DNA of 64,000 nucleotides, from positions 1,426,001 to 1,490,000 of the forward strand of contig NW_025963913.1 of assembly GCF_023055435.1 (NCBI RefSeq), written 5' to 3'. Positions 1-55,670 of the stretch are shown in pieces. The stretch comes from Haliotis rufescens. Its lineage: Eukaryota. The notes under the pieces are model-generated. The model searched no databases, was not told where the DNA came from, and saw only the letters and a program-made list of their open reading frames with translations. A program made the position numbers and the translations under genes. Position 1 is the first letter of the stretch. Every line of letters begins with the position of its first letter.

Positions 1-18
1 ACAAACACAATGCCTCGA

Positions 19-2400: not shown

Positions 2401-2818
2401 GAAGAGTCGATTGCCCTATTCCGACCATATCATGAGCATGTGTATGAATCCAAATGGTGATGATACCAGGTGTTCGCGAAAAGGTGGGCGTATCATATAA
2501 TTGTGGAAAACCTTCTCTCGACATACATCCAGTTTAAGAACGGATAAATCTACAGTTCCATCACATTTCTCATGTTGTCTTAGAAACAAAATCATTATAC
2601 ATACGAAATAAGACATGGTGATCGTGATTGGACACATTCAATGCGGAGCAAAAAGCATCGTTTTTCCGTCCATCTTACGCTTTAAAAACTCGACGCTTTT
2701 CCGGACAATTTCTGGCCGCTCAATGATTAATCAGTTTTAATGAATGTTTTGTCGTCTAATGACCATATACGGAAAAAACAACGTTTTCGTGTTTGCAATG
2801 ATAGATGCGTTGTATTCC

Positions 2819-2906
2819 TCACATGATTCACTTCCTGGCTGCTAACACATATGCGCCAGTAGAGACATACAAGAGGCACTGTGAGGTGTTGATGTTGGAG
2901 GTGAGT
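2819..2906 (+). promoter_or_regulatory. Putative promoter plus non-coding first exon, copy A proximal cassette
   Basis: TCACATGA 2819-2826, TCACTTCCTGG 2828-2838, donor GTGAGT 2901-2906; homologous to 43093-43167. Confidence 0.55.
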
Positions 2907-4427
2907 TCTTTCTGTACATGTTGTTATTTAGTCACAAGTTTAATGTGTTAATTTGGTCATACGAGAAAAGGTTACAAAAAGCGATCAGGAGTGTTTGAAC
3001 AATTCCTTCATCTGCTTAAAATATGTATACATCCAGTAGCTACAATGATATGCATAATATTATTTTATTTCAAGATAATGTCAATCTAGAGCATACTAGA
3101 TGAATAAATAACCAAAAGATTATGTAAGTTAAGTGTGGAGTATGGCCACGGCTTTATTCATGAAATTACAGGGGGATGATATTTTGCATAACCCTGCAGG
3201 TTGGGCGAACCAAAATCACTGAATGCCGGCCCGAAGGCAATAGGACAAACAGAAAGCGCGACTCGAGAGGATAAACACATAACGAGTCATCAAAAGGCAA
3301 AATGACTTTGATCCCCCCAGGGTACACCAAAGGAGGTCAACCAGCGTGTCATTAAGCAAGCTAGGCCCTCGCGGGTAGCGCTCATCGAAGGCCTCTGGAA
3401 ATTACTATGCCCAATCCGCAAGTATTACGCCGCGATGTCACACATGGCGTTGGATGAACCTCACCTCGGTGACTGAATGGAGTCCTGCTGCCGTGACTGA
3501 AGCAGAACTGAAATTTGGCTTGGTACCCCTGTGATCATCCACAACAACCTGAAACAGCAAAATTTCTAGGCAGAAATTGTAACTTACTAACCTTCATAAG
3601 GTATATACTTTAATCATGTAGCTCATGACATGTCTGCAATATAAATATAAACTTTTAAGCTATAATAAGGGTGGGTATCGGGAGGGGGAAAAACAGTTTG
3701 CCTGTAATGGCCCCCGAAAGCGAAAGGCAGAGGGGAATTCCTTCACATTAAAGGTTTACTTCAGTTATCTCCCTTTGCCATGCTACTAATGTATAACCTG
3801 AATAATCTCATGGGAGCCGGCCTGTAATGCAAAATTATAGCTTGTAGACCCGAGTAACCTCCCTTAGCCTGCAACATAAATACTATAGTGCACAAATTAA
3901 ATGATGGGTCACCTATCCCAGGATTGCCGAACTATAATAAACCATTTTATCCTGTAAAGATAAAATTAATTATTTCAAGATAATGTCAATCTAGAGCATA
4001 CTAGATGAATAAATAACCAAAAGATTATGTAAGTTAAGTGTGGAGTATGGCCACGGCTTTATTCATGAAATTACAGGGGGATGATATTTTGCATAACCCT
4101 GCAGGTTGGGCGAACCAAAATCACTGAATGCCGGCCCGAAGGCAATAGGACAAACAGAAAGCGCGACTCGAGAGGATAAACACATAACGAGTCATCAAAA
4201 GGCAAAATGACTTTGATCCCCCCAGGGTACACCAAAGGAGGTCAACCAGCGTGTCATTAAGCAAGCTAGGCCCTCGCGGGTAGCGCTCATCGAAGGCCTC
4301 CGGAAATTACTATGCCCAACCCGCAAGTATTACGCCACAGGACTGTGTCTATACACAGACCCTCCAATACTTGGCACAGAAAACAAAAAAAAACAAAAAA
4401 AACAACAACAAAAAAACAAACTTAACA

Positions 4428-5013: not shown

Positions 5014-5186
5014 CTGTAAAAAAGACTTAATTAATGCATGAACAATTTTTCATACAACATACAATATCCAAACACATTGGTAAAGCAGGTAATGACATGA
5101 TTAGAATGAAATGAAGTAATTAGGAAAATAACATAAACATGAATGCATAAAATTGAAAAGTACATGATATATGATCATGATGATTG

Positions 5187-7200: not shown

Positions 7201-7502
7201 CATAGGTTTCTGGCATGCCTAAAGGACGCAACGCTCCTTCCTTTTCATGATAAGATCATTATGATGTATTAGTTCGTTTGGAATAATGTTGCACAATAAA
7301 AACTATTTTGGCCTCGTACCTTTTGATAAAAGCATACAACGACACTCGTCGAGAAAATTGGAATTTTAAAGCTCCTCAATTCTGATACTTTAATCGACGT
7401 GTGCTGGAATATTTGTGATAAAACACATTCTGGTAAGATTCGCTATTTATGTGATCAGTATTAAGCAAGTTTTGTTGTTGTCTTTTCAGTTAGGTATCCG
7501 AC

Positions 7503-10500
7503 ATGGGTTTGGTCTGGATAGGACTGCTTATGGCCTGTGTCACTGTTACACTCACTGGTAGGAACGTTATTCTCAGAATGTGAAATAAGTATAAATATTT
7601 GACTTACCTACAGGTTGGATTCACAAACAGTTCCTTATCCAGAAACTTTGTCTATATGTTCACTGTTGTGTGAATCAGTAATGACCATTATCAATCAAGT
7701 GAAGGTACATTTTTTTCAAACAGATGCTGAATGTCACTGTAACACTACAAGCGCCTGTGCCGTGTTCCCATCTACTCCCTGTAGCCAGGTCGGCAGTCCA
7801 GACGAATGCCAGGAAGGATGGTATGGTTCGTACTGTCAGAAACGTGAGTGTGAGGTCGATGGGTAGATGTAATATCACAAATACAAGTCACCGATCATTG
7901 TGATACTGATCATGTGTTTATATTTTCAGAAAATATTGCGTTGGGAAGAACATGCAATCAGAGCAGTTCATTGAACTATAACGCAACTAACTACGGAGCG
8001 GGACTTGCTGTAGACGGCAGAGCCACCACAGATGCCAGGAGCACGCCACTGACATGTGCCCATACACAGGAAGAGACAGATCCCACCTGGACTGTGAACC
8101 TGAACACATCACGTCCAGAAAAGATACAACACATAAGACTCTATCTACGTGACGACTGTGAGTACATCCACATATGAAGAAGTAAGGGTGATAATATATA
8201 ATTCCAAAATATAATTGTTGAGGAGTAGTTACTGTGAGGATAACTAACGAACTACGAGGAATTACTTTTCACAGGGGAATTAATGTAATAGATCCAAAGT
8301 GAGCGACATTAATTCCCAAGGGAAAGATAAACCGAGTTGTTATATTTATATAATAATATTCCGAATTTCGAGTTGGTTATTCTCTTTCTTACCCATAATC
8401 AAATTTAGTGCCACCGTCTCTAGCTTTTATTCCTAAAACAATCGAAATGTCACACGTGTTAACGTACAGACACAGCGGCTCAGTAGCCAATTTATAGTTT
8501 TCGAATAGTAAACTAGCACTGGGTGGTGCATGGGTGAACGTGGACTATTTATCATCAACCCCAATTAAGTAAGCTGAATGTAGTAATTTGAAATCAGAAT
8601 CCAGACTTTTCGCCGTTCTTGTTCCATGACAGCGCGTTGATTACAAACTCAAAGGAAGAACGAATGGAAAGAAGTTCCGTCGACCAATGGAAAGCCGAGT
8701 TATTTTAGGAAAACTGTAATTCCCAAGAGCATTACAGAATATTTAATACCTTTTATCCAGATTCGTTTATATGTAAGAAAATCAAATAGGTTACTTATAG
8801 GAATTATATATTTTTCATCAAATATTATATTATAACAAGGTATAACTTCAGCAGAAGTTACACATTTGTTTGTTGTTGTTTTTCCCAATAATGATGTAAA
8901 ATACAACAACAAACACAACAGAATGGTAGGATCTATCAAGAGTACACTGCACACTGAGAATAATTACTAATTCCAAAGGCAATATATCTCGTAATACAGA
9001 CAATTAATATAGCTAATGCACATGTTTATAGTTAATATAATGCAGATGCAATGTAATTTAAAAATGAATAAAAATAGTTGCCAAGATAACCACAGTCTTC
9101 AGAAGTGAAATATAGTGAAGTAATTTATATACCATTTCTATTATCTTCCTTCCTTTTAAACATTGAACACGGCCTGGTGGTAATATTCCCAATAATTAGG
9201 TAACATTTTGGCATGGACGTCGTTTCATAGAATTAAATCTTCATATTGTCATCAATAGTCGTTTTAATACCAAGGTAATGTATTCCACTTAGCATCGTTA
9301 CTTCTACAAGTAACATAGATCTTCATTGTTGTAGTATGTTTATCTACATTATACTATGTTTTAAGTCCTATGTTTTCAGTGGGTTGTCCATCTGAATTCA
9401 GAAAACGCCGATAATAGTCATTGCGCTGGTCCCCAAACACGTTGTGTTTTTAATTCGTTTTACGTTACTCAGATTATTAACAGGCATTGAAAAGTGTCTT
9501 AGTCACCGTGAAGTGGGCACCCATAAAGAACATCAGGTGTGCCTTGCAAGGTTTAGTTCTAGGGTCGGGGACAGCAAACAAACAACTGTCAAAATAATTT
9601 CATATAATTTAAAACGCATTCACTGAACCCCATTTAAGAAGCGTGGGACATGACTGATTAAGGGAGCGTGTGTTTGTTGTTTAATTCCACTCAGCAGCAA
9701 TTTAGCTCTATGGTGGCTACTGCAAATAATCAAGTCGTCATTACTATCATCGCAAACAACAATCCACGCATTCGTGGTATGATGCCACGCAATCAACCAA
9801 GTCACAGAGCCTTCCGTTTGGTCGTCTCTTACGACCAGCATAGGTTGCGGGGGACCCATTCTAACCCGGATTCCCCACGAGCGGCCTTCTTGAAATTGTG
9901 AAGTGAAGTGGCTGCTACATTTATGCAAGTACTCACAATGACATTTCTGGCTTCTCCTGAATTGATCGTGTTGCCTCATTAAGTATCAATGGTTGAGTTT
10001 GCAGTTGTTATCCAGATCAGGAAATGGGGTAAAATGGGGCTTAACGATATTCAAGATTATTTCACTTACGTAGCGATGTCCTTGACTTGATCTCTTTTTA
10101 CATTCATTTTGTAAAGTGCAAGAAAGACACAACGGCATGGAGATACTTGTGGGCAGTCAGATGTGCTACAACTGGTCGTCCACTGAACATCCTCCTGCTA
10201 TAGCTATTTTCACCTGCCGTCAGCCACTGACAGGAACCACGGTCACTATACGGATACCTGGTGACAGGAAATTCCTTTCCTTATGTGAGATGCAGATATT
10301 TGGTATGTCTTTGCTATTTGAATTCACGTATTTTGACAATTTGTCATGTGGTATGAACTATAAGCTCTCACTATCCAAAGATGTTTGAGCTGAATTGTTT
10401 TTCATGAATTAGAGCTGAAACTGCTCTTATCGGTGGGTCACCAAACTTGTTGCACGTATCCTTGGAACATACAATCGATACTATAACAACCGTATTAAGT

Positions 10501-34500: not shown

Positions 34501-34828
34501 CAAAGTGTTTCGTATTATAAGCTTACTCTTGGGGAAGATACACACACAACTATGATGTTTTCTTTATCACCCGAGCTTAATAAATACATATTGGCGTTAT
34601 GATTAATAGTGTCAGGGTCTTGTCGAGAAGCTCCATTGCCTTTATCTATTATTATGTCAATATATTTCATGTCATCACAAAAATGTTTGCAGAAGGGGTG
34701 TGTGGGGCTTCCAGTTCAACGCTTTCATATCTTATTTATCTTTACCTTCACAATTGTGTAATGTTAACTTCAGCAATCTTAAATGCAAACAACATAAATC
34801 CTGTAGATTTGACACATTGTACTGATCA

Positions 34829-34898
34829 TCAGTTCCTGGTTGCACTTGCACACGCAGGGACGTCACATCAGAATGATTGTGATTTGTTGATGGTGAGT
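34829..34898 (+). promoter_or_regulatory. Putative promoter/first-exon cassette 1 upstream of copy B
   Basis: TCAGTTCCTGG 34829-34839, donor GTGAGTACTGAC at 34893; downstream intron sequence is homologous to the other cassettes. Confidence 0.5.
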
Positions 34899-34966
34899 AC
34901 TGACATCGAACTTGTTATTTTAAATGATTTGCTGTATGTATATGAGAATTAACTTAGGTATGATTA

Positions 34967-35137
34967 GGAGATAAACATACTGTGTTTTCAATGTAGAGCT
35001 AGGTTACCGGTGGATTTAACCCCGCTAAATTGAATTTGGAACCGAACGCGCAGCGTGAGGTTTCAAATGTTAAATTTAGCGCGGTTAAATCTACTGGTAA
35101 CCTAGCTCTACATTGAAAACATAGTATGTTTATCTCC
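34967..35137. repeat. Long hairpin at the left end of a ~0.85-kb insertion
   Basis: GGAGATAAACATACTGTGTTTTCAATGTAGAGCTAGGTTACC.. pairs with ..GGTAACCTAGCTCTACATTGAAAACATAGTATGTTTATCTCC. Confidence 0.85.
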
Positions 35138-38100
35138 ATTCTACCATTACTAAATAAAACGCGAACTCTTTGGTGTTAGCAAATATACTGAGTGAAGCGG
35201 CATGGGTTGAGTTCAGTGTTTTGAGTGGGTTATCGATCTCAATTACGGAATCACCGAACAAAATATGGTGCTGTATATACTCAAGCAGTTTGTTTACACC
35301 GTAATTCTTCACTCGAACATATGACAGGCATTGAAAGCATATAAGCACGGCAACTTGGTAAGCTTACATGAGGTGGGCATCCCTAAAGAAAACAAAGCAA
35401 GCTTTGCATGGCTTTCGCTCTACATCGCACGTCACCATTATGACGTCATATCGCTCATTGTGACGCAAAAAATATGACGTCACAGTCGTATATAGAAAAG
35501 CGCCAAATTCCAAGCTCTGTGTTGTCTCCAAAACGTAAATACATTCCCTTTGTTGATTTCTGTCGTGTTTTTCTTCACGAAATGTATTGCCACACATCAT
35601 TTGAATACTGTAGTAACCGCATCTGTGCATTTTGTAACCTGTTATTGTAGATATAATTACTTCAATATACCTACCGACAATGGCTGAAAATAGTACTATT
35701 TTATGAATATTACTTTCCGCGGTCATGCGGCCGTCGAGCAGCTGTTTCAATCAGTTTATTGTGATTTAATAGCCTCTGATTCACCAATCAGAATCGAGTA
35801 AATTCCAAATTCATGGTAGAATATGGATTGTCCTTCTGTCAGCCTATTATTTATGTAGTACATGTTCAAGATGAAAAGCAGATTTTTATAAGCGTTTACT
35901 ACTTTATGCAACTCGTTACTTGGAATTGTCCTCTCTAACCATGCAATATGTTTCGATAAATACAGCTGTTGTAAACAATACATGATCATATATTGCAGCA
36001 TCTCCTTTTGTATCTGAATCCTATACTTGAAATTGCTTAGAGGAAAAAAAGTTTGTAATACATTCAGCACATAGACATGCAATGGTTTTCTTAAATTAAC
36101 GCGCATATATGAGTTTACCAAAGTATATTTTTGAGATGAAAATGGTATTGGGTTATATCATAAACAAAATGTATTTGTTTGGGCAAACGTTATGAGTGAT
36201 ATGACATAGCAAATGAAACCATATGATAACTATTTGAGTAAAGCACACTGCTGCTGCTGCTAAAATAAACATTACTTACTTTAACACTACAAGACTAACA
36301 GTTCCTATACATATTGACATCCGGCTGTTGTTTGCGTTTGTAAACTCTCATTATACTCACGAAGTACACATTGCCAAACTGCTTCCTCTATATTTTGGGT
36401 ATGAGATTCTAATGACATCTTCACCTCATATATGCCTTTACTTCTTTCATAATATTTTCATCTTTGACTTTTGATGTGAACTAATATTGAGCATATACAT
36501 GTGCATATGGTATAAACGGCTATACCCTTCAGTTAAGGTTAGAATAATAACTTTAGGACACGTTACCATAACGATAACACGTGTCTTGGTCCCCTCTGGT
36601 CCCTGAAGTCGGATGTCAACAAAAAGACGTTAAAGCATTGAAAGCAAAATGTAACCTGATCTCTTTATTAGAGGGGGGCGTTCGGGTGGCCCTGTGGTTA
36701 AAGCGTTCGCTCGTCACGCCAAAGATCCGGGTTCGATTCCCGACATGGGTTAAAAGTGTGAGTCTCATTTCTGGTGCCCCCTACCGTGATATTGCTGAAA
36801 TATTGCTAAAGCGGCGAAAAAAAATACTCACTCGCCTCATTAGAAGCAATGATGGTTTCATGACAACGACCCCATGAACGTTCATATGAATATAAAGCCC
36901 TGTGTGTAGGTGTAGCTTTGGAGAGGCCATGGCACACTGCAAATATTGTCCTTGGTCGTGGCATGATCAGCCTAGCGTGGTTTTCAATCCTAGATTTTGT
37001 CGATTATCATCATTGTCACTATTCCTGTCATGTTTTACCATTTAATCTAACGTCTATGAGTACGCTGAGCATCAGCTTTGGTTTGCTTTCGTCATCCACT
37101 TGAAGTTGTCACGCCATGATATAACAAACGTACTGCTCAAGGGGACGTTAAACAACTAACTCTTGCCTGTGTTGATGCACTCTCCTGAAGTACCAATTGC
37201 AACATAAATGTTCCTGGTGTCAGTTTTAATGCAGACTACGGAAAAGCGCAAGTAATGACGAACCATAATATCTATTTCCTTGCAACCGGCCACATCATTT
37301 TAATCAACACCGACAATTCAAAGAGATAAAATGGCGAGAGTTACCAATCCAATGACTTATGCATTACATTTTAGTTTTAAAAACAACAACTTTTATTTAA
37401 TTAGTTGTCAACGATATAACTGTCAAAATAGGGAGTTAGTTCTTAGTGGTTACGAGGATGTGATTGACTGTAAGGCAAATACGTGACATAGCTAAGACGT
37501 CATAACTCAGACGTTAGTCACTTTTTTCGGCCGAGACCTAATAAATAAAAATGACAAAACCCTTTCCATAGTCACTAGAAATAAAGGAACGTCGTCACAT
37601 AATACAGATTACACGCAACCACTCTACCATATGATATAAATATGACTATTTCACTCAACTTTGCGTGTTTGTATTATAAACATATGCAATGTAACATTTG
37701 GGAAATGAATTATCATATATACCGTTCTGTTACATCAAAAAAGTTCGGCTGTAAATGTTTCACTCGAATAAAAGAAGCGCATTTTGAGTTTCATGAGGTG
37801 ATGTGCCAATGTTAAGTTCAAGACGGTCATCACATTAGTCCTTTTTGTTATACATAGAGAATCACACCAGAGTGTCTTTTGATATCAAATATATCAACAC
37901 GAGTTGATAAAACTGGGAAAACTCCGAGGCTTGCCGAGGATTTTTGCCACTTTTATCAACGAGTGTTAATATTTGATTTCAAAAGACACGAGGGTGAGAT
38001 TTTATTTATCATCCAACATCATTCTTCTAACTTTTTCAGTTTGTAGACAGTAATAAACAGTGTATTAAGTGTAAAAATGTTATGCTAACAGCTTCAGTAG

Positions 38101-38162
38101 CAGAGCCATTAGTGATGTCATTTGATTGTGACGTCATGGTAACCAATGTACTATTGTAGTGA

Positions 38163-38275
38163 TCATGTGACCTGTTACTGCTCGACGCCATTCACTTCCT
38201 GGTTGCCGACACATGTGCACCTGTGCAAGCGGGGACGTCATTTGAGAACAATTGGGTTGGTGATGTGAGGTGAGT
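38163..38275 (+). promoter_or_regulatory. Putative promoter/first-exon cassette 2 upstream of copy B
   Basis: TCATGTGA 38163-38170, TCACTTCCTGG 38192-38202, donor GTGAGTACTGAC at 38270. Confidence 0.55.
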
Positions 38276-39582
38276 ACTGACATGGGATTGGTAATTTTTG
38301 CTGTGTGCATATACATGATAGCTCCTCGTGTGAAGTCTATATACAATTTGAAAATTATGAATTGCAAAATGTCCTTCAGAGTTTTTATTTGTGCAGTACA
38401 TATAATTCAGTACATAGCGATGCAATTACATAACGGATATAACGATTGTGTTTACTGAATGACAAATACTCAATCATTTCATGTTTGTCTGATTCATAAT
38501 TATCCCTTTTTGCTCAAGATACACTTTTTTGAGATAAACGTATCGTGTTCGTGATTATATGACATAATTATTACTGCTATTATACATCAGATTTGTATTT
38601 GAAATAAAACCTGTATGTATGAGTTTACAAAAGCATACTCTAGATATAAAAAACAATATTGGGTAACCAATGAATCAAATTGCAATCATCAAATGTGAAA
38701 TTGCTTGTTTTGCCAAACGTAATATTTTCATTCATGTGACATTACGTATATCCATGTTTTCACTCATTATGTTTCCAATTAAAATAAAATAACCATTTGA
38801 TTAATGCACTCTTCTTCTAAAAGAAACTACCGTGTTCATTAATATGTGCATTACTTACTTTAAAACGTACAAGGTAAACAACACTGTATGTAAAAGGAAG
38901 AGAACCTTACAACGATAAGGTCTTGAGTTGAGTCAACTATGATGATAGCCAGTACAGTTTCCCCCTCCACTTGCAGTGGGGACGGCCGGGCAGCCTAGCG
39001 GTTAAAGCGTTCGCTCGTCACGCCGAAGACCAGGGTTCGATTACCGAGATGGGTGCAATGTGTGAAACCCATTTCTGGTGTCCCCCGCCGTGATAATGCT
39101 GGAATATTGCTAAAAGCGGCGTAAAACCATACTCACTCACTCACTCACCCCCTCCACTTGCAGTGACCAGGCGTTAAAGCCAGGTAAAGAGTTGTAAGGG
39201 CTACACAATATACATGACGACGAACATAACGTTAGTATACAGACTGATATCTTGGTGTTGGTATTGTATAAACTCTTACAACACACATGAAGTACCCATT
39301 GCCAAAATTATTCCACTATATTTTGGGGAATCCATTCCAATGGCATCTATGACACAAATATGTGTATTTGACTTCATTGATAATGTTTTCATCTTTGACT
39401 GATCTTGTGCACTAGTATAAGCATATACAAGTACATGTGCATATGGTATATCAATGTCCATAGCCTTCCTCTAAAGCTTGTCCATCCCAACGGACGCGTA
39501 CGGTTTATTTAAATTAGATAATATCAAATATTTGCATCAAAATAATTGGTAAATTTAGTGGCTCATCAAAAGCTATTAACCC

Positions 39583-39733
39583 NNNNNNNNNNNNNNNNNN
39601 NNNNNNNNNNNNNNNNNNNNNNNNNNNNNNNNNNNNNNNNNNNNNNNNNNNNNNNNNNNNNNNNNNNNNNNNNNNNNNNNNNNNNNNNNNNNNNNNNNNN
39701 NNNNNNNNNNNNNNNNNNNNNNNNNNNNNNNNN
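39583..39733. other. Assembly gap
   Basis: Run of N. Confidence 1.
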
Positions 39734-41095
39734 CACTGAAAATCAGTGTTGACGTCGCGTATCGGGTGTTCTGCAAAAGGGTGCCGGCAGCACCCGCCAG
39801 TGTATTTGCATAAAAAGAAAGTGTTTGTCAGCAGACGCTGCACATCAGTACTCCTACCATGCGAGGGGCGGTCTGGTAGCCTAATGGTTAAAGCGTTCGC
39901 TCATCACGCCGAAGACCAGGGTTCGATTCCCGACATGGGTTGTGTGTGAACCCTATTGCTGTTGTTCCCCGCCGTGGTATTGCTGGAATATTTCTTAAAG
40001 CGGCGTAAAACCATACTCACTCACTCACTCCTACCATGCACGGCGACCTGTAAACAAACCAGACAATCAAGCGATGGACCAGAAAATGCAGTGACACGAG
40101 TATTTACAGAATTTGTAGAAACTGAAAATGATATATTCATTTTGAATTACGTCTGCTGTGTACGGGTGTAGATATATTGCTGCTTTTAAGTGCTTTTAAA
40201 TGCATGAGAGAGTTTATGATGAAACTTCAGTTTACCATCAGAAACATCGGCACAGTTCAAGGAACAATAGAACTTCAACGCACAGTGCGTTTTAATGGGA
40301 ATAATGGGAATACACACGGGTTTAAATCATAAAATATTATTAGATCAAATATATCAACTGTAAAGCTGAGATAAGTCAAAGTATCGATTCAGGGAATGTA
40401 GTCTCGAACGTCAATATCCGAAAACATCTTCATCATGGAAAGTTCACACATTTATGTTTGAGGGAACATCCACATACATGGCCACTCACATACCTTGCAT
40501 AACTTTAACCCTCCCATGGTAGAACAAAACAAAACATTAGTTTTCACGGACAAACTACATACTACTCACAAGAAGTTAAAGAACACCCGATTCTTTCATA
40601 TGTCATGACAGATTAAAGTTCTGGTAATGTGAAAGAATCGTGTGTTATTTAATTTCTTTTGAGTAGTAGTTACTGCTCAGTAAGGATTGTTGTGGTCCCT
40701 TCATATGATAGCATAGGTATTCTATAGATGTTTCCTTTGATGACGTTTACCACCATATCTTGATATTTGACATGTCGACGTGAAAACTATGCAGACAGGG
40801 TATTGCAGAGACCAGAATAGACAAACATTTAGTCAATGAAATCATATATTACACAATACCCTTCTCGACTCTAAAAATAAAAATAAAAAATTGTCCCCAT
40901 GTTGATTTCATATGTGAAAAGGAACTAGCTAGAGCTGGCTAGACTTGCTTTTATATACGTTTCTAGATTGTTTATATACACAGGTATAGCAAAGTGTTAT
41001 GTGGATAATACACGATATCAGGTGAGCCTTAGATATATGAGTATCGTTGTGTTACTATCAACCCCAAAGCAAACAATGTTAGCAGATATCATGCA

Positions 41096-41228
41096 CGGAA
41101 GTGACGGACACAATGCCTCGATTATGTGAACCTAACCTCCGCTCAATTCACTTCCTGGTAGCCTACACACGGACTCCTGTAGAGACACTGTATTGCACAA
41201 TTATATGACGTTGACGTGTGAGGTGAGT
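41096..41228 (+). promoter_or_regulatory. Putative promoter/first-exon cassette 3 upstream of copy B
   Basis: CGGAAGTG at ~41096, TCACTTCCTGG 41148-41158, donor GTGAGTACTGAC at 41223. Confidence 0.55.
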
Positions 41229-42000
41229 ACTGACATAGTACAGTTCATTTAATTGTGTGCGTGTGTGTGTATCGACGGTAGTTGCTGTACGCGAAAATAT
41301 TTATTAATATTATATTAATAGCATAGTCCGTTTGTACTTGATGATGAGCACACACCGTTGTCAACTGTGCTTTCCTACACTGTCCCATTTAACCATGTAC
41401 TTGCTCTAGATTCATGGACGGCTTTTGTAAACACATGATCACATTTCAACTGCACTGCACCTCGTTCAAATATCTCTACACAAGCTTTCAACGGGCAAGT
41501 AATTTCACACCTCACTTGGAATTACGGGTGTCGGGTAGCCTAGTGGTTAAAGCGTTCGCTCGTCACGCGAGCCGTGTCAAGACCCGGGTTCAATTACAGA
41601 CATGGGTACAAATTTTGAAGCCCATTTCTGGTGTCCCTCGCCCTGATATTGCTGGAATATTGCTAAAAGCAGCGTAAAACCATACTCACTACTTGAAAAA
41701 GCAGATTGAACCTGCGCGGATAGGATGGAAAATTTGTGTGTTTCAAGTTTTCCTAATATGTACTCTACCAATTTTTTTTTTTTAAAAAGACCACATCTTA
41801 TGATCCTCGTAATCTGTCTCATGGAACTACAATGTGGATTGTGCCCGGGCTGGTTTGGCGAGTGAATGTATGTGGCCCATATAAAAGAGAACATGAAGAT
41901 GCTAAAATCTTAGGTGCATCTCAGAATGCTCGTTTGAGCAAGTAATAGGCTCAATGAAAGAGTCCTGAAACTTACATGACAGCTTGAGAAACAACACTTA

Positions 42001-42541
42001 AATAATAATAATAAGCCTCAGATATATCCAGGCCAACAAACCTGATCTTATCCTTTTTTATCCCTATGAAATTATTTATATTATTGATTTTTCTGTCCCA
42101 TTTGACGCTAATGTGATTGACAAGATTGAGGAAAAACATGGCAAATATGCAGACCTCACTTTCGAAATGTCACGCTTGCATCCAAAGTAACAAGTTGCCC
42201 GACTCCCCATTGTTCTAGATGCCTTAGGTTTGGTACCTCCCAATCTGTTGACTGACATTGGGAGTTTGGGGTTTGCTACCAGGAATACAGCCCTTCCGAC
42301 AATCTGGGTAATACAGAAGGCTGCAGTGTTGGGGAGTCTTCACATTCTCCGAAAGGTTCTGGGTTGGTTCGACAAGGCAGCGCTTCCTGGGAGAAGTCCC
42401 ATTCGCTGCCTGGGCTGCGTGTAGAGGGGGCAAGGGCCCTGAGCTGATGATGAGCCTAATCAGCCTGACTGTGTCAGGATCACCCACACCCTCTTTGCTG
42501 CATTTTTTTATTTTAATCTGTAAATAATAATAATTATAATA
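42001..42541 (+). mobile_element. Shorter R4/Dong-like 3' fragment at the paralogous site
   Basis: Homologous to ~1940-2400; (TAA)n on both sides. Confidence 0.75.
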
Positions 42542-43092
42542 AAAAGCGACAAACTTTCCATTTTCAAAAGAAATGTCTGTCAAAAGAAGTGTCCATTGTA
42601 CGATTTCGACCATGTTATGAGCATGTGTATGAATCTAAATAGTGATGACACCGGGCGTTGGCGATAAGGTGGGTGTATCCTACATAACTGTCAGTACATT
42701 GTGGAATGCATCACAATTATGCAAAGGAACATTAAAACCTTTTCTCGTTATACATCCAGTTTAAGATAAGTCTACAGTTCCACCAAATTTCTCACATGGT
42801 CTCAGAAACATAATCATTATGCAAACAAAAATAAGACATGGTGATAATGAATTATAACACGATGTTGGGGACCCTCGCCATCTGATTGGCCGTTAACTGT
42901 TGTACAAGGCGGACCAAAAAGCATCGTTTTTCAGTCCATTTTACGCTTGAAAAACTCGACGCTTTTTCCGGACAATTTCAAATTAATCGATTTTAATGAC
43001 TGGTTAATCATTTTTCCGTCCAATGTCCGTATACGGAAAAAAACGACGTTTTCGTTTTTACAATGATAGATGCTTTGTATTGTTCACTTGAT

Positions 43093-43167
43093 TCACTTGA
43101 TAGTTGCTAACACATATGCGCCAGCCATACTAGAGGCACTGTGAGGTGCTGATTTTTAGAGGTGAGT
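43093..43167 (+). promoter_or_regulatory. Putative promoter/first-exon cassette 4 upstream of copy B, ETS core degenerate
   Basis: TCACTTGATAG at 43093, donor GTGAGT 43162-43167; clear homology to 2828-2906. Confidence 0.45.
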
Positions 43168-43364
43168 TCTTTCTGTTAATGTTGTAATGTAGTCATCTGT
43201 ATAATGTGTTAATTGAGTCATACGAGAATATGTATACATCCATTAGATACAATGCAGATTATTATTTAAAATCATATTATAAGTCTTTTCCCATAATTTA
43301 ATTTTTGTTCTCCATCATCAAACTAATTATAATACGCCCTGATATAAAACAGCGATAAACATAT

Positions 43365-43427
43365 ACTCACTCACTCACTCACTCACTCACTCACTCACTC
43401 ACTCACTCACTCACTCACTCACTCACT
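43365..43427. repeat. (CACT)n microsatellite
   Basis: Perfect tetranucleotide run; only a short version at the paralogous ~6700-6722. Confidence 0.9.
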
Positions 43428-43799
43428 AAGTGAAAGGGTTTTGTTTCACGACGCTTTGAAAATGACAGAATATTTTAATGAGTTATATCACAATATGCCA
43501 GGCGACAATAGGTTTCTGGCATGCCTAAAGGACGCAACTCTGACTCCTTTTCATGATAGGATCATTATGATGTATTAGTTCGTTTAGAATAATATTGCAC
43601 AATAAAAACAGTTTGGCTTGTGCATTGTGATAAAAGGATTCGATACTCGAGAAAATTTAATGTGAAAGCTACTCAATTCTGATACAATAATCGACGTGTG
43701 CTGGTATATTTGTGATAAAAACACACTCTGGTAAGATCCGCTTTTTATGACATCAGTATTATGCAAGTTTATTGTTGTCTTTTCAGTAAGGTATCCGAC

Positions 43800-46700
43800 A
43801 TGGGTTTGGTCTGGATGGGACTGCTTGTGGCCTGTGTCACTGGTACCCTCGCTGGTAGGAACGTTATCCATAGAATGTGAAATAAGTATAAAAAATAAAT
43901 ATTTGACTAACCTGTAGGTTTGATTCACAAACAGTTACCTATCCAAAAACCCTGTCTACACTCTCCAAAAACTGAAACGCACAGGTAGATTTTTAGTAAA
44001 TCTATTGTACCTAATAAATTCGATATATTTAATTTAATATCATAGATTCAAATATGAAATTATGGAGCTCGATAGGCACATGTTGTACAAAGGCATTGAT
44101 AAATGTTCATTGTCATGTCAAATAAGGCCACAAGGTGGCGCTGGACTCAGTATCTCGTGTGACCGCCCCGGGTAGCAATCACGGCTCTGCATCTCCTCGG
44201 CGCTGACTGGATAAGTGTACGAATTCTGTCTTGCGGAATTCTGCGCCATTCTGCTTGTGACGCGTTGGCCAGGTGTGGGAATTTCCTGCGGCGTGTTACG
44301 ATGTGACGTGCACGTCGATCGAGTTCATCCAAGAGGTGTTCGATTGGGTTGAGATCTGGAGATCTCGACGGCCAGGGCAAGCCGTTGATGTTGGCATTAT
44401 GGAGGTAGTTTACCGTGACACGAACTGTGTGCGGTGGAGCGATGTCCTGTTGAAACAGCTCCCTCTGACGGTCAATGATTGGAAGAAGGTGAGATTGAAG
44501 AATTTGAATCGTGTAGTGATTTGCTGTCATATTTCGCTGATCCACAACAAAGTCAGATCTCGTGGTGTAAGATATGGCCCCCCACGGTATGACACTACCG
44601 CCACCGAAATTGTCGAATTCACGTACATAATGTGGGGCAAAACGCTCATTTCGACGACGATAAACACTTCGTCTTCCATCTCGCCGGTGAAGAAGAAATC
44701 ATGATTCATCGCTAAACCACACTCTCCTCCAGTTTCTCAAATTATAAGGTTGAAGGGTATGTCACCAACGCAAGCGTCACTGTCGATGGATCTGTTGCAA
44801 AACAGGGACGACAACTGGTCTTCTGGGTCGGATTCCAGCCTCGCGAAGATGGTTCCTGACAGTCTGGTCCGATATCCTCCTCAAACCAGGGATGCGTCCT
44901 GCAGTCTCCGTAGCTGTGGCATTGCGATGATGTAAGTGGAACAGTCGAATGTAGCGATATTGTGCAGGGTTGGTAACTCTTGATCGGCCGGTTCTCGGAC
45001 GGTCTGCAGTGGAATTGAACTGTGTGTATCGGTCCCAAAGGCGGCAAATTGTGCTGTGGTGGACGTGACAGTGGCGTGCAACAGAAGACTGCGATTCCCC
45101 TCTTTGGATAACTCGTATGGCGATGTTACGATCGGCAGCGCTGAGTCTCGTCATTTTCGAACTTGAAAAAATGTTGACAATTGAATGACAAATTATTGGC
45201 TTATGCTTGCCTTTTTTTAGCCTCTACCTAGGGTTACGAATACAATAACTTGCACGTGTATTTTGCTTTACTGTTTTCCTCCATTACATTTTTGAAGTGT
45301 GAAAACAATGCCTTTAAGTCATTTCAAATCGACAATGGCTGCGTTTTGACACACCGTTTGTCGAATATCAGGCCACCAACATTTTCCAGTAACAAATATC
45401 TATTATATATCCAGGATTTGTTGTGTAGTCAGGTCCAATGAAATACATAATACATGTCCGTTTCTTATTTTTGAAGAGTGTATATGTTCACTGTTATGTA
45501 GGTTCATGTTTGAATCAGTAATGCTCACTATCAATCATGTCGAGGTACCTTTATACAAACAGATGCTGAATATCACTGTAACACCACTCGTGCCTGCACC
45601 CTTTTCCCCTCCACTCACTGTAGCCAGGTCGACAGTCCAAACAGATGCCAGGAAGGATGGTTTGGTTAAAATTGCCAGAAACGTGAGTGTGAGGTCGATG
45701 GGTAGATGTAATATCGCGAATACCAATCACCGATCATTGTGATACTGATTATGTGTTTATATTTTTAGAAAATATCGCGTTTGGAAGAACATGCATCCAG
45801 AGCAGTACATTGTACGGTCAAGCAAATAACTACGGAGCAGGACTTGCTGTAGATGGCAGAGCCACCACAGATGCCAGGAGCACGCCACAAACATGTGCCC
45901 ATACACGAAATGAGACAGATCCTACCTGGACTGTGAACCTGAAAACATCACGTCCAGAAAAGATACAACACATCAGACTCTATCTACGTGACGACCGTGA
46001 GTACACACACATATAAAGGTGTAAGGGTGATAATATATATATAACTGCAAAATGCAATTGTTGAGGAGTAGTTACTGTGAGGAAAACTAACGAACGAGGA
46101 ATTCCTTTTTCACAGCAGCAGTCGATCACTTCACGACACATCGGATTGTTTAAAATACGTTTGTATCAGTTGCATTTCTCGTAGAAAACACATAAAAAAA
46201 CGTTTATTCCTATCAGATTCAGATAATAAGGAGATATGCTAAATTGAATTTGGAACCGAACCCCTGGCGTGAGTTTCCAAATATAAAATTAAGCATCTTT
46301 ACTTCTACAAGTAACATAGATCTTCATAGTTGTGGTATGTTCATCTATATTATACTATGTTTTAAGTTCAATGTTTTCAGTGGGTTGTCTGTCTGAATTA
46401 AGGAAACGACGATAAAAGTCATTCCACAAAGTTTGGTTTTCGAAAATTTTACTTTACTTACATTATAAACAGGCATTAAAAAGTGTTGAAGCCAACCTGA
46501 AGTGGCCACCCATAAAGAATATCAAGCATGTCTCGCAAGGTTTAGTACCGCGTCGCACGTCCTTAAAATGACATGAGACCGCTCATTATGACACAGGAAT
46601 TATTCTAATTTGTTGTTTGTTTCTTGTTTAACGCCGCGCTCAGCAATATTCCACGCAATTGGGATACGATGACATTCATCAACCAAGTCAGCGAGCCTGA

Positions 46701-49700
46701 ACACCCGATCCCGTTAGTCGCCTTTTACGACAAGCATAGTCGCTTTTTACGGCAAGCATGGGTTGCTGAAGACATATTCTTTCCCGGATCTTCACGGATC
46801 GGAAATATTCTAAAATGCCTACGTACAATAACTGAGAAAGATAATTATTAGTTTAATGAATATTAGCTTCATAGGTGATGCGGTCATCTAAAAGGCTGTT
46901 TCAATCAGATGCGGTTATTGTGATTTGATAACTTTGTTTCATCAATCAGAATCGATGAATTTCCTAATCAACCAAGTCACTGTGCCTTACCACCCGATCC
47001 GTTTGGTCGTCTTACCCGAAATCCCCATAAGCAGCCTTCTTGAAATTTTGACGTCAAGTGGCTGCTATGTTTTGCAAGTACTCACAATGACCTTTCTGGT
47101 TCGTCCTGAATTGATCGTGCTGCCTCATTACGTATCAAAAGTTGAGTTTGAAGTTGTTATCCAGATCTGGAGGTGAGTTGAAATGGGGTTTAACACTTAC
47201 ACTTACTGTTATTGCATTTACATAGCGATGTTCTTGACTTCATTTCTACATTCATTCTGTACAGTTCAAGAAAGAAACAACGGCATGCAGGTTCTTGTTG
47301 GCAGCCAGATGTGCTACAACTGGTCGTCAACTGAACATCCTCCTCCTATAGCTTACGTCACCTGCCGCCAGCCACTGACAGGAACCACGGTCACTATACG
47401 GATACCTGGTTCCCTGAAATTCCTTACTTTATGTGAAGTGCAGATATTTGGTATGTCGTGGCTATTTGAATTCACATATTTCGACATTGTGTCATATAAA
47501 ATGAACTATATAGCTCTCCCTATCCATTCAGGTACGAACTGGTTTGTTTTTCATGAATAAGAGCGGAGAGTGCTTTTATCTCCAAACAGTAGTTCACCAA
47601 ACTTGTTGCTCCTATTGGGACGTACAGTCTATACTATCACTCCGTATGAAGTTATATGAGTTGTTCCAAAGTGATTATAATCACCAGGAGGTGTTACTTT
47701 GTTACTTTCTTTACATGTATGTTGGACATAGAATATCATATATCAAAATGATAACAATAAACAGTAAATACACTTTATAGCAAAACTACCAAAATCCTCC
47801 TCGAGCATTTCAACTTATATTCTATAAAAGAGCAATTAGACAACAACATGAATGTCTTTGAATATGGTAAACAATAATCAGTTTGCAGTGATGGATGGTT
47901 TTCTGAAGATTGTGACAAACAGTGCCGGTGCCTTAGCAGTACTGAAATATGTGACAAGATCTCTGGTCACTGTTCTAGTGGATGTTTCCCTGGATATCAT
48001 GGTACCGACTGCCAAACAGGTATGTGCTGAAAATGGTATAAAAATAGAAATAGCATTTCATGGGAGCCATTGGGAGATATCTCATGTACGCTCAGGTACA
48101 CTGTAATTATGTACACACAAAAAGCTTGCGAGTACAGTCATTGTTTCTTAATCTTTGTTGGGGCACTGAGTGGTTTATTTTAATGCATTTTTTAAAATGA
48201 ACAGTTTCGTACCATTGAATTCACCCCAAAACGTAATTTGCTGTTATATTAATTGGTAGATGGACTAATTATCCTTCATGTTCGAAACCGGTGATTCAGT
48301 GAAAATCATGCATAACAAGTTCGAATAACCTTCCTGTTGTCAGTCAGTCAGTCAAAATGTACAGCTATTTGAATTGTGTGAATGAAGAACAGGAATCTAA
48401 CAATGTATAACATTGATTGTCGCCATAGCGTTGATGTCATACTATCTGATAACATTGCGACATTTACCAAATTGAAGAAATTTTCAACGTCGAGTTACCA
48501 TGTTAACAGGTTTGTACAGTCGAACCTCACTTATCCGGACAGTTGTGTTTTCGAAATATTAGCCGGATAAACGTATTCCGGATACTTAAATCCCTTGTTA
48601 GTTAGATCCCCTACCCAAATTCTACGGAGGTAAACAAATATCTATTGTATGATGTATAATATTATTCGCGAATAAAACTACATCGTATCAGTTCAGCGAA
48701 TTCAGGTCAACGAACAGGTGATGAAATTCGCGTCTGTGAAATAGCAATCACCTGTACTCACGTTTCCTCCCAATCTGCCGGTAATCCAGTTAGGAAATGC
48801 TAGAAAATATAACTTGTGATGCAATTTTCGGAATAAATTTTATCCCAAACTATTATTATATCAAAAATAGTTTATTCCAAGATCGCTTTTTTTATTTGCG
48901 GCGTTTAATATATCAATTTCAAAATAATGATTTCCCGCTGTCTTTTTATGTTGGCATATAATAGTCTGGCTACAATAAAAGTGGCTTTTAACTAGTCAAA
49001 GTATGGCATTTATGATATATTTTTCCCGATTCTCTACCGCCTAACGTTCTTTTCAAGGCGTCAGTAGTGTGCTGCGATCACTCACGGTTTCGATTAAATT
49101 ACTTTAAAGACAGAAATGTAACTATATATGGCCATTGAGGTTAGTAACACATGCCCCAATGAATGAAGTTCTTCCTTAAGTTTATCGTGTGGGACAGTAG
49201 TGTACACAGTTGAAAATTAAATGTTTTACGTAACTGAACGTCTTTTCTGAGATTGAGAAACTTCCAGCAAATCCTTAGAGATTTTGAGAATGCACATGCT
49301 ATTACTTCCGCTTGTGTTTACAGCATGTGCAGATGGATCCTTTGGTAGCAACTGTAGCTCCCAGTGTGGACACTGTCTAGATGGTGATATCTGTGACAAG
49401 ACACACGGAACATGTCGTGGAGGATGTGCAGCAGGATGGATGTATGGCACATGTCTACAAGGTGGGTTTGTGTCATTTTAAGTGAAGGCTAATATTGCTT
49501 GCAGAATACGATTACACCATGTGTTCATAATATGTGTGTATGTGTTTGCAGCCTGTCCAGATGGTGCCTATGGTATCAATTGTGCCTCCCAGTGTGGAAA
49601 CTGTCTTGATGGTGTAAGCTGTGACAAAACAACAGGAACCTGTTCTAGGGGCTGTGCATCAGGATGGATCAATGATGACACATGTCTACAACGTGAGTAC

Positions 49701-51375: not shown

Positions 51376-51779
51376 TGGGTTTACCATTCATTATGGAGGA
51401 GAGGATTTTACACTACAGATATATATACTTATTACCACGGGGTACCAGGTGAAGAGGTGTCATATTTAAACTCATGTCTTATACTGTAGTTGTTTTCATT
51501 GAAACATAATTATATACATAGAAAATAATCAACTTATCCTACATTACATACACTTTTCATAAAAAGATTAATGTTTTAGATCTCGATCGATGTAACTTCG
51601 TGTAGAATCGACTTTCGCCTGATGAATTTGAAAAAAAATCTCCGAACAAGGAGAATCAATCTGGCCTTTAAAAGTTCATACATACAGTATACAAAAAGAA
51701 ACTTGACGAATGCAGACTTTCTGTACTTTGTGTGGTTTAAGGTAGACACGATGTATATTGATATTGTTTCGTTTCCCTT

Positions 51780-54700: not shown

Positions 54701-55670
54701 TAATAGTTTGTAAAATGAAAATATTATCTATTGTGCTATATCCTTTTCGAAATCCCGCTTGCGACTAGCTAATTTGGTCGTACAAATTTGCCCAAAATAC
54801 TTATCTTGCATTAAGAACTAATGTATAAAGTTTACTTAAAGTGCTTAAAAGGGAAATACCTCTATAATTATAAGGATCAGATTTATCATCTGACTAGTAC
54901 AAAGGTATTATGATACCTGTACTCCATGATTCAGGGAAATAAGATGATTCAAAAATGACATTAAACAACAATTCCATGTATGGCAACAATATATTGGAGG
55001 AGGATTTGAAAAATTCTGAGATTAGGTTATCTTCCCCTTGAGATTTACAGTTTTTTTTAGTAAATAGGTTGCTTCTTGTATCTCTTCTTGAGTGACCGTA
55101 TCATCAGCATTATAGTCAGTATCAGAATTTCCAGTCTGTTCTGGCAAATTAGCGTCACATTCTTCAAATAAGTTCTTGAAATACGAAAACCATTCTGATA
55201 TATCTACATTGTCCTTTTTTGACGACTTGGTTGTATATTTCTTTAGCACAGTCCAAAACAATTTAGTTATTTATATTAGCTAGTAAAATGTCTCTGACAG
55301 ATGCATATTATATAGTCTCTTTTTACTCTGTATTAGGTCATTATATTTATTGCGTTAAGTAATGTATAAATGTAGTGATTCACTGTTCTTTGATCTTCTA
55401 AAAGATTTCAGTAGCCTCAGCGTTTCTGATCGATTGAAATCACATTCTGAGTCAAACCATGGTGGATCTGATTTTACAGGATAAGTTTTCTTCTTTATCT
55501 TCATGAAGTCCGCAGCCTGGTGAATAGCATTAGTAAAAACTTTAACAGCTTGGTCGATATCGGTCAAGGTAAGAGAGCAGCAGTCATTAAGCATAGATGA
55601 TATATCGGATGATAGGATATTGTCTCTTAATCTTTCAGCACAATTATTATCCCATAACAATTTGAAACCT
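51780..55670 (-). mobile_element. Paralogous copy of the degraded RTEX-like LINE, interrupted by an insertion at ~52001-53638
   Basis: Colinear with ~16240-18460; retains the LFAD RT region that is deleted in the other copy. Confidence 0.78.
52025..52135. repeat. Near-perfect 111-bp palindrome
   Basis: 55-bp arms with 2 mismatches around a single T at 52080. Confidence 0.92.

What the first reader, a model, noticed from the sequence alone, without database searches (positions are those of the whole stretch)
34829..43854. Tandem array of alternative promoter/first-exon cassettes feeding one immune-receptor gene
Seen: four homologous cassettes (34829, 38192, 41148, 43093), 2-3.4 kb apart. Each has TCA(C/G)TTCCTGG (degenerate in the fourth), ~60-80 nt of non-coding sequence and a consensus GTGAGT donor. 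I found no coding exon between them and the acceptor at 43786 just before the signal-peptide ATG. Downstream intron DNA is also homologous (36100-36510 vs 38610-39450; 35925-36000 vs 800-880 and 41380-41460), so whole promoter units were duplicated. Motifs and donors persist while the flanks have diverged. Copy A has at least two cassettes (43, 2828). Inference: a promoter-choice array that varies regulation rather than protein sequence, architecturally like the variable first exons of clustered protocadherin or UGT1 loci but non-coding.
Basis: partly seen in the sequence, partly recalled or inferred. Interest (0 to 1): 0.8.

Follow-up and report, generated by a model that had tools for sequence, protein, structure and literature searches.

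The report
Duplicated untranslated leader exons, abalone lectin-receptor genes
Upstream of a red-abalone lectin/EGF membrane-receptor gene sit four diverged copies of the gene family's short untranslated first exon with its promoter; they are real and inherited from an old three-copy layout shared by sister genes, but their use as alternative promoters is unproven and this gene copy carries a premature stop codon.

Summary
All six cassettes (43, 2828, 34829, 38192, 41148, 43093) are homologous units: an ETS-like motif, about 70 untranslated bases, then an invariant GGTGAGT donor.

They are not a private array of one gene. The model search found 19 matches in the 1.33-Gb Haliotis rufescens genome; I inspected about 20 copies, 18 of them on this contig.

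They fall into three old types:
- alpha: 34829, 38192
- beta: 41148, 43
- gamma: 43093, 2828

In the paralogues that keep more than one type, the order is the same ahead of the signal-peptide exon, so the layout predates the gene duplications. A local duplication of about 3.4 kb added the second alpha copy.

Copies decay one by one. 43093 has lost the motif, 34829 is strongly diverged, one paralogue's gamma copy is dead, and two paralogues' beta exons are split by a SINE.

No coding relic lies between the cassettes. The N gap sits in intron DNA that stays colinear with a paralogue.

Use is untested. In four RNA-like runs exon 2 is covered in two, but cassettes 38192 and 41148 and the donor end of 43093 have no depth. 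34829 lay outside the stretch.

Gene B has an in-frame TAA in exon 3.

Verdict: a real, inherited multi-leader architecture. Promoter choice is plausible, not shown. The scan earlier noted a similar cassette array in a TRIM cluster of this genome.

The parts
34782..34959 (+). Cassette B1: alpha type, strongly diverged. Motif TCAGTTCCTGG at 34829-34839, a 12-nt deletion, an ACGTCA element at 34860, last exon base 34892, then GTGAGT.
   Evidence: alpha profile E 4.6e-36; 59-61% identical to the other alpha copies
38145..38326 (+). Cassette B2: alpha type with all conserved features intact. Motif at 38192-38202, ACGTCA at 38235, last exon base 38269.
   Evidence: 87-88% identical to the single cassettes of two paralogues at C135:1308171 and 1226244
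40960..41288 (+). Cassette B3: beta type, intact, with about 190 nt of conserved upstream promoter-like sequence. That sequence includes an inverted GGAAGT at 41097 facing ACTTCC at 41150. Last exon base 41222.
   Evidence: the upstream block 41054-41129 is 84% identical to L060:2885-2960
43044..43220 (+). Cassette B4: gamma type. The ETS-like motif is lost (TCACTTGATAG) and there is a small deletion. The donor is intact, last exon base 43161.
   Evidence: partner of A2 at 82-85% identity
1..182 (+). Cassette A1: beta type, belonging to gene copy A. Motif at 43, last exon base 117.
2780..2959 (+). Cassette A2: gamma type, intact, belonging to gene copy A. Motif at 2828, last exon base 2900.
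34665..36491 (+). First alpha unit: cassette plus the start of its intron. It is colinear with L061:151-1218.
38147..39400 (+). Second alpha unit: cassette plus the start of its intron. It is colinear with L061:244-1197 and L060:171-2167. Together with the first unit it forms a local tandem duplication of about 3.4 kb.
39583..39733 (.). Assembly gap (N) in non-coding DNA between the alpha and beta cassettes. Not filled.
41344..41502 (+). Conserved block in the intron downstream of the beta cassette: 87% identical to copy A 764-921 and 89% to L006:1911-2057. It shows weak similarity to 35927-35991 in the alpha unit.
43787..43854 (+). Common exon 2 of gene B: a pyrimidine tract, AG at 43785-43786 and the conserved AG at 43789-43790, ATG at 43800, a 19-residue signal peptide, donor after 43854.
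   Evidence: covered by RNA-like contigs in runs X1 and X2
7490..7557 (+). Common exon 2 of gene A, with ATG at 7503.
   Evidence: matches the N-terminus of RefSeq protein P0001
45563..45684 (+). Exon 3 of gene B, with an in-frame TAA at 45664-45666. Paralogues A, C and D read Ser/Pro-Tyr at that position.

Best explanation
What each cassette is: the promoter-proximal, untranslated first exon of one subfamily of tandem F-type-lectin-like/EGF/transmembrane/tyrosine-tail receptor genes of the red abalone.

Shown:
- An ancestral gene already carried three diverged copies, alpha, beta and gamma, in that order ahead of the signal-peptide exon.
- Gene duplication passed the set on to the paralogues.
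- In gene B a local duplication of about 3.4 kb added a second alpha unit, giving four cassettes.
- Copies are lost or degraded independently in different paralogues.

Inferred mechanism:
- Transcription starts near the ETS-like motif (read on the other strand, CCAGGAAGTGA), helped by an E-box-like site about 25 nt upstream.
- The leader of about 65-80 nt is spliced from its GTGAGT donor to the single acceptor 10-13 nt before the ATG. It skips any downstream cassettes because they have no acceptor.
- Every start therefore gives the same protein.
- Cassettes that keep both motif and donor are most likely alternative first exons with partly redundant promoters. In gene B these are 38192 and 41148; in gene A, 43 and 2828.
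- 43093 (motif lost) and 34829 (diverged) are likely weak or decaying.

Not shown: that any cassette is transcribed, or that more than one is used per gene.

In this assembly gene B itself looks like a null allele or a young pseudogene.
For: Homology and layout:
- Homology of all copies.
- Three types in a conserved order across paralogues. Gene B has alpha, alpha, beta, gamma. A, D and F have beta then gamma. C has beta then a dead gamma. L060 and L061 have alpha then a beta remnant.
- The segmental duplication 5-18459 / 41108-55671 carries beta and gamma together.
- The genome census gives only 19 model matches, 17 of them on this contig between 1.2 and 1.88 Mb, often in pairs 4-6 kb apart. 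This is not a transposon.

Signs of constraint:
- The donor GTGAGT is kept in all but one of about 20 copies, although the types are only 50-65% identical.
- The motif is the second most conserved block.
- The acceptor with its pyrimidine tract ahead of the ATG is conserved in four paralogues, so exon 2 is an internal exon that needs a leader.

Against the deleted-gene origin:
- No coding relic lies between the cassettes.
- The two alpha units are colinear with a single paralogous unit.

Gene A's N-terminus is a RefSeq protein model.
Against: - No RNA support. In four RNA-like runs the bins holding 38192 and 41148, and the 3' end of 43093, have zero depth. Exon 2 of gene B is covered in two of those runs. 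No cassette-to-exon-2 joint is among the rows shown.
- That evidence is weak. The data are short Logan contigs, the output was swamped by SINE repeats, 34829 lay outside the 6-kb stretch, and tissues are unknown.
- Between copies A and B the cassettes are no better conserved than neutral flanks. The promoter is 80-88% identical and the exon body 65-72%, against 82-87% for intron.
- Several copies are visibly decaying, as expected if only one per gene is needed.
- Gene B has a premature stop.
Confidence: 0.55

Rival explanations
1. One working leader per gene, the rest relics. Each gene uses a single cassette, probably beta, or alpha where beta is broken. The other copies are leftovers of old promoter/first-exon duplications, drifting towards loss and without a regulatory role.
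For: - Copy-by-copy decay: the gamma motif is lost in B and F, gamma is dead in C and undetected in E, L060 and L061, and the beta exon is split by a SINE in L060 and L061.
- 34829 is only 59-61% identical to the other alpha copies.
- There is no extra conservation of cassettes over flanks between copies A and B.
- Depth is zero on three gene B cassettes in RNA-like runs.
- A follow-up on a TRIM cluster of the same genome reached this reading for a similar array (s1-806692; not checked here).
Against: - The donor is intact in nearly every copy, including copies that lost the motif (B4, F2) and distant copies on another contig. Neutral relics at 25-45% divergence should often have lost a 6-7 nt site.
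- Beta and gamma are both fully intact in A and D, and alpha and beta in B.
- The three types kept motif and donor over the long time in which they diverged to about 55% identity.
Confidence: 0.33
2. Origin by gene loss. The upstream cassettes are first exons of former whole-gene copies whose coding exons were deleted, for example by unequal crossing-over in the tandem array. The orphan leader was then captured by the next gene downstream. This concerns origin, and is compatible with either present-day reading.
For: - The genes lie in a dense head-to-tail array where such deletions are expected.
- The three types are old enough to have served separate genes.
Against: - No relic of a signal-peptide or other family exon lies after any upstream cassette in B, A, D or the L060/L061 intervals.
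- The same alpha-beta-gamma order recurs in paralogues, so any such event predates the family's expansion.
- The 34829/38192 pair is a duplication of the alpha unit alone.
- The gap 39583-39733 cannot be inspected.
Confidence: 0.15
3. Not first exons of this gene at all. The units would be spliced-leader-type RNA genes, a mobile element, or purely DNA-level regulatory modules whose GTGAGT is conserved for another reason.
For: A short leader plus a donor in tandem copies superficially resembles spliced-leader genes.
Against: - Only 19 model matches, 50-90% alike. Wherever flanking DNA was read they lie on the coding strand just upstream of genes of one family.
- No conserved Sm-site-like element follows the donor.
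- No Rfam family matches.
- The flanks are unique DNA, not terminal repeats.
Confidence: 0.03

Closest known systems
Genes with several alternative untranslated first exons, each with its own promoter: aromatase Cyp19a1 (PMC2684739), and from my own knowledge NR3C1 and BDNF
   Same: Several non-coding 5' exons, each with only a donor, lie upstream of one common acceptor just before the start codon. The protein is unchanged and the regulation could differ.
   Different: In those genes the first exons are unrelated in sequence and their use is shown by transcripts. Here the exons are diverged duplicates of one another, the set is inherited across a paralogue family, and use is not shown.
Variable first-exon arrays of clustered protocadherins and UGT1A (my own knowledge)
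   Same: Tandem homologous first exons, each preceded by a conserved promoter motif, all able to splice to shared downstream exons.
   Different: Those first exons encode the variable part of the protein. Here they are non-coding, and there are only 1-4 per gene. Promoter choice is untested.
Multiple promoters and non-coding upstream exons of Ly49 and KIR NK-receptor genes (PMC4222648, PMC3069108)
   Same: A tandem family of lectin-type signalling receptors whose genes carry more than one upstream promoter and untranslated exon.
   Different: The Ly49/KIR switches are bidirectional promoters with shown sense and antisense transcripts. Here only an inverted pair of ETS-like sites in the beta promoter hints at anything similar, and nothing was tested.
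Cassette array in a TRIM-NHL cluster of the same genome (scan note s1-806692)
   Same: As described there, the same grammar: E-box, ETS-like site and a splice donor, in surplus copies upstream of tandem genes.
   Different: A different gene family. No sequence homology was found by my searches. I did not see that window.

Membership tests
Gene with multiple alternative untranslated first exons | Two or more 5' exons with a donor and no acceptor, upstream of one common acceptor | tested here: met
   Six cassettes in the window end in G|GTGAGT, and no conserved AG with a pyrimidine tract precedes them. A single conserved acceptor lies at 43785-43790 in gene B and 7490-7493 in gene A.
Gene with multiple alternative untranslated first exons | The start codon lies in the common exon and the first exons add no protein sequence | tested here: met
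   The ATG is at 43800 in exon 2, and the signal peptide starts there in all paralogues and in RefSeq protein P0001. The leaders have no conserved reading frame.
Gene with multiple alternative untranslated first exons | Each first exon is transcribed from its own start site and joined to the common exon in mRNA | tested here: inconclusive
   zero depth on 38192, 41148 and the donor end of 43093 in four RNA-like runs, with exon 2 covered in two.
Protocadherin/UGT1A-type variable first-exon array | Tandem homologous first exons, each with a conserved promoter element | tested here: met
Protocadherin/UGT1A-type variable first-exon array | The first exons encode the variable part of the protein | tested here: not met
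   The cassettes are non-coding. No family exon or conserved ORF lies in them or between them.
Protocadherin/UGT1A-type variable first-exon array | Regulated or stochastic choice of one promoter per cell or tissue | not testable with these tools
   Needs single-cell or tissue-resolved 5'-end data.
Spliced-leader RNA genes | Near-identical high-copy tandem genes with a conserved Sm site after the donor | tested here: not met
   Only 19 model matches, 50-90% alike, upstream of one gene family. There is no conserved Sm-like element and no Rfam hit.
Orphan first exons left by deleted gene copies | Relics of the lost gene's coding exons or its intron 1/exon 2 boundary downstream of the orphan exon | tested here: not met
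   No + strand hit of the exon 2 profile or the exon peptides lies between 34829 and 43689. The 151-nt gap cannot be read.

The most novel reading that the evidence does not exclude
The ordered alpha/beta/gamma leaders would form a family-wide promoter-choice system. Competing promoters, including the inverted ETS-like pair of the beta type, would set which lectin-receptor paralogues a given haemocyte expresses, or under which stimulus. That would be an invertebrate counterpart of the variegated expression switches of Ly49/KIR receptors. The same E-box/ETS/donor grammar would be reused by the TRIM cluster of this genome.
Probability: 0.08. Interest if true: 0.7.

Novelty: new variant of a known kind. 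Interest (0 to 1): 0.35.

Why it matters
If several leaders per gene are used, a fast-evolving family of lectin-headed signalling receptors in a mollusc would be regulated through duplicated promoters that leave the protein unchanged. This would be a simple way to place near-identical receptors under different controls, and a tractable case of how alternative first exons are born, by promoter duplication, and die.

As it stands, the value of the finding is mainly for annotation. The leaders define the true 5' ends of about ten genes whose first exons are invisible to ORF-based views. They also flag gene B as a probable null allele.

Tried and rejected
RNA evidence:
- The look-up of sequencing runs and read laying each allow one call; both are used.
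- The 6-kb limit left 34829 out. tRNA-derived SINE copies filled the joint and loose-end tables, so rare junctions could not be seen.
- The runs found may have been picked through the Tc1/mariner copy in intron 2, which makes up about 10% of the query.

I could not fetch cDNA-type contigs for 5' UTRs.
I stopped that form of the step and used only stored files and references afterwards.
I stopped that step, so there is no genome-wide count of the bare "motif + spacer + donor" pattern.
Only parts of the other paralogues were read.

Searches that gave little:
- A protein search with the lectin exon ORF returned only gene A's short RefSeq model and a genomic ORF of a paralogue.
- The first literature search, for tandemly duplicated non-coding first exons in immune genes, gave nothing useful.
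- The earlier-findings look-up by sequence was blank, which means nothing.

Readings rejected:
- Transposon: copy number and location.
- Spliced-leader genes: no Sm site, low copy number.
- Recursive splice sites: the sequence before the AG|GT is purine-rich, not a pyrimidine tract.
- Gamma as an internal exon: a possible acceptor exists only in A2 and B4 and is not conserved in D2.
Full report
**Setting**

- The window is G000:C135:1426001-1490000 of a 1.33-Gb assembly.
- A protein search names the organism as Haliotis rufescens, the red abalone. The 140-residue RefSeq protein LOC124116604 (P0001) lies on the same 13.8-Mb contig and equals the N-terminus of gene copy A.
- The window holds a segmental duplication: 5-18459 matches 41108-55671 at 80-90% identity.
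- Each copy carries a gene read exon by exon:
  - a signal-peptide exon (ATG 7503 / 43800);
  - a Cys-rich exon;
  - two exons of an F5/8-type-C / F-type-lectin-like head; one exon alone scores 23 bits on PF22633, under the cut-off;
  - three or more EGF-like exons;
  - a tail with tyrosine motifs.
- Upstream of the window the same contig carries further head-to-tail paralogues, with exon 2 at window-relative -39605 (gene C) and -14137 (gene D).

**Check of the observation**

- Each has the motif TCA(C/G)TTCCTGG; at 43093 it is TCACTTGATAG. Motif to donor spans 64-78 nt, ending in G|GTGAGT.
- Profile searches recover every copy at E 1e-27 to 1e-48 and find no further copy inside the window.
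- In a 13-copy alignment the donor heptamer is invariant and ranks first of 177 runs of seven columns.
- The motif block has 0.85 mean pairwise identity, against 0.52 upstream, 0.66 in the exon body and 0.54 downstream.
- Between 34829 and 43689 there is no + strand match to any family exon peptide or to a DNA profile of exon 2 with its flanks.

**The gap**

- 39583-39733 is crossed by no frame.
- Left of it, 39355-39400 matches L060:2122-2167. Right of it, 41054-41129 matches L060:2885-2960. Order and strand are kept.
- Alpha-to-beta spacing is 2.96 kb here and 2.76 kb in that paralogue. The paralogous interval has no family exon.
- Nothing suggests a hidden exon, but the letters are unknown and I did not look them up.

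**What the cassettes are**

A genome-wide search with a sequence-only model of the cassette gives 19 matches. This is a lower bound. Seventeen are on this contig between 1.21 and 1.88 Mb and two are on contig C68. Wherever I read the flanks, a cassette lies on the coding strand 0.7-6 kb upstream of an exon 2 of this gene family. The cassette is therefore the family's leader exon with its promoter, not a mobile element.

The copies fall into three types:

| Type | Copies |
|---|---|
| alpha (carries an ACGTCA element) | 38192; the diverged 34829; the single cassettes of two paralogues at C135:1308171 and 1226244 (87-88% identical to 38192) |
| beta | 41148; 43; genes C, D, E and F |
| gamma | 43093; 2828; gene D; degraded copies in genes C and F |

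Between types, identity is only 50-65%. Within types it is 57-92%.

The order alpha, beta, gamma, exon 2 is the same wherever more than one type is present:

| Gene | Cassettes in order |
|---|---|
| B | alpha, alpha, beta, gamma |
| A, D, F | beta, gamma |
| C | beta, then a dead gamma |
| Two distant paralogues (L060, L061) | alpha, then the promoter half of beta, followed at once by a tRNA-derived SINE |

- The multi-leader 5' region is therefore older than the gene duplications.
- Copy A's two cassettes are the duplication partners of 41148 and 43093.
- The extra alpha copy of gene B comes from a local duplication. 34665-36491 and 38147-39400 are each colinear with one cassette-plus-intron unit of a paralogue.

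**Constraint and decay**

- The GTGAGT donor survives in every copy inspected except gene C's gamma, which reads GGTCTGG and has also lost the motif. It survives in copies that lost the motif (43093, F2) and in the two distant C68 copies.
- Given 35-50% divergence between types, this argues that each type served as a real 5' splice site for a long time.
- The acceptor before the ATG, with its pyrimidine tract, is conserved in four paralogues, so exon 2 is an internal exon that needs a leader. The AG shared by all four is at 43789-43790.
- The beta promoter is alignable for about 110 nt upstream of the motif, even to paralogues whose lectin exons are only about 51% identical in protein. It holds GGAAGT (41097) facing ACTTCC (41150).
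- Against strong present-day constraint, between copies A and B the promoter is 80-88% and the exon body 65-72% identical, no better than surrounding intron at 82-87%.
- Individual copies are plainly decaying.

**Transcript evidence**

- No run is on record as RNA, but the four runs laid behave like RNA. Unique intron bins have zero depth, while the SINE copies have depths around 10^5.
- Exon 2 of gene B is covered in X1 by a piece of about 61 nt with one variant at 43820, typical of a SNP bubble in a k=31 graph.
- It is covered in X2 at depth 24 with no difference from gene B. Gene A would differ at five places.
- A third run (X4) has slight depth in the same 200-nt bin but none at position 43820.
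- The bins holding 38192 and 41148 are empty in all four runs, as is the bin holding the last 12 exon bases and the donor of 43093.
- No cassette-to-exon-2 joint is among the rows shown.
- This is a weak negative. The data are contigs, not reads. The expression is low. The tables were truncated by repeat joints. 34829 lay outside the permitted 6 kb.

**State of gene B**

- Exon 3 (45563-45684) has an in-frame TAA at 45664-45666. Genes A, C and D read Ser/Pro-Tyr there, ahead of a conserved Cys.
- A degraded Tc1/mariner copy lies in intron 2.
- In this assembly the gene that the four cassettes would feed is a null allele or a young pseudogene, although it is transcribed at a low level.

**How it most likely works**

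Shown:
- the homology, the types and the order of the cassettes;
- the inheritance of the set through gene duplication;
- the decay of individual copies;
- the common acceptor.

Inferred from general knowledge of ETS-class sites (core GGAA, CAGGAAGTG-like) and TATA-less promoters:
- Transcription starts near the motif.
- The leader splices to the acceptor before the ATG, skipping any downstream cassettes because they lack acceptors.
- The coding sequence is the same from every start.

Odds: I put 0.55 on cassettes that keep motif and donor acting as alternative, partly redundant first exons in at least some paralogues. I put 0.33 on one working leader per gene with the rest relics. The gene-loss origin story (0.15) concerns history and is compatible with either. 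Spliced-leader, transposon or non-exon readings are disfavoured (0.03).

**Comparison with known systems**

- The nearest kind is a gene with several untranslated first exons and promoters, such as Cyp19a1 (PMC2684739). NR3C1 and BDNF are further examples from my own knowledge.
- The structural features of that kind are met. The transcript feature is undecided.
- The protocadherin/UGT1A comparison fails on its defining feature, coding variable exons.
- Ly49/KIR receptor genes offer a functional analogy, with multiple promoters in a lectin-type receptor family (PMC4222648, PMC3069108). Nothing here tests it.
I found no sequence homology to it and did not see that window.

**Verdict**

The architecture is real, tidy and inherited. 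It is a variant of a well-known kind, without evidence of use, attached here to an apparently broken gene copy. Interest 0.35.

Noticed in passing
window 45664-45666: In-frame TAA in exon 3 of gene copy B. Paralogues A, C and D have Ser/Pro-Tyr there, before a conserved Cys. Gene B is a probable null allele or young pseudogene, or the assembly is in error.
   Followed up: partly
window 36675-36833, 38978-39148, 39865-40030, 41530-41693, 61867-62026; also L060 from about 2985: Copies of a tRNA-derived SINE; RNA loose ends read GGGTTCGATTCCC, a B-box-like string. One copy lies downstream of each of the first three gene B cassettes, and one splits the beta leader of two paralogues. Summed contig depth in RNA-like runs is around 10^5. 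ARAGORN calls no tRNA.
   Followed up: partly
window 44147-45154 (- strand): Degraded Tc1/mariner-type transposase ORFs, an HTH part and a DDE part in different frames, inside intron 2 of gene B. They are absent from copy A. They may be what drew the RNA runs in the run search.
   Followed up: partly
window 34990-35115 and 46240-46300: A long, near-perfect palindrome that looks like a MITE lies directly downstream of the 34829 donor. A related piece lies in a gene B intron.
   Followed up: no
window 29840-30541 (+): A 233-residue open frame of Cys-rich EGF repeats, with weak PEAR1-like and teneurin EGF hits. It lies between gene A and the cassettes of gene B: another EGF-repeat receptor exon or fragment.
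   Followed up: partly
window 21209-23653 (-), with 18715-19497 matching 23337-24171 and the gap 20498-20902: An 814-residue reverse transcriptase plus RNase H ORF of a retrotransposon, flanked by 94%-identical direct repeats and a strong GC/AT skew. A second RT fragment lies at 16585-17430.
   Followed up: partly
window 57196-58542: A tandem satellite of about 37-nt units, roughly 36 copies.
   Followed up: no
window 764-921 and 41344-41502; L006:1911-2057; weakly 35927-35991 and L061:488-583: A block in the first intron, a few hundred bases after the leader, that stays 87-89% identical among beta units and is faintly shared with alpha units. It is a candidate intronic regulatory element, or part of the original duplicated unit.
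   Followed up: partly
gene A, window 7503-8170; protein P0001: The RefSeq model for gene A is only 140 residues. It ends by reading into the intron after the first lectin exon, so it is either an intron-retaining isoform or a truncated model.
   Followed up: no
window 2746-2807 and 43011-43070: The 60 nt just upstream of the gamma cassettes belong to a high-copy repeat, with more than 1000 candidate matches genome-wide. RNA-like contig depth in the bins spanning 42750-43149 probably comes from repeats such as this one.
   Followed up: partly
window 40563-40665 (-): A weak Rfam hit to the plant miRNA family MIR5649: 35.6 bits against a gathering score of 100. It is almost certainly a chance match to a hairpin-forming repeat.
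   Followed up: no
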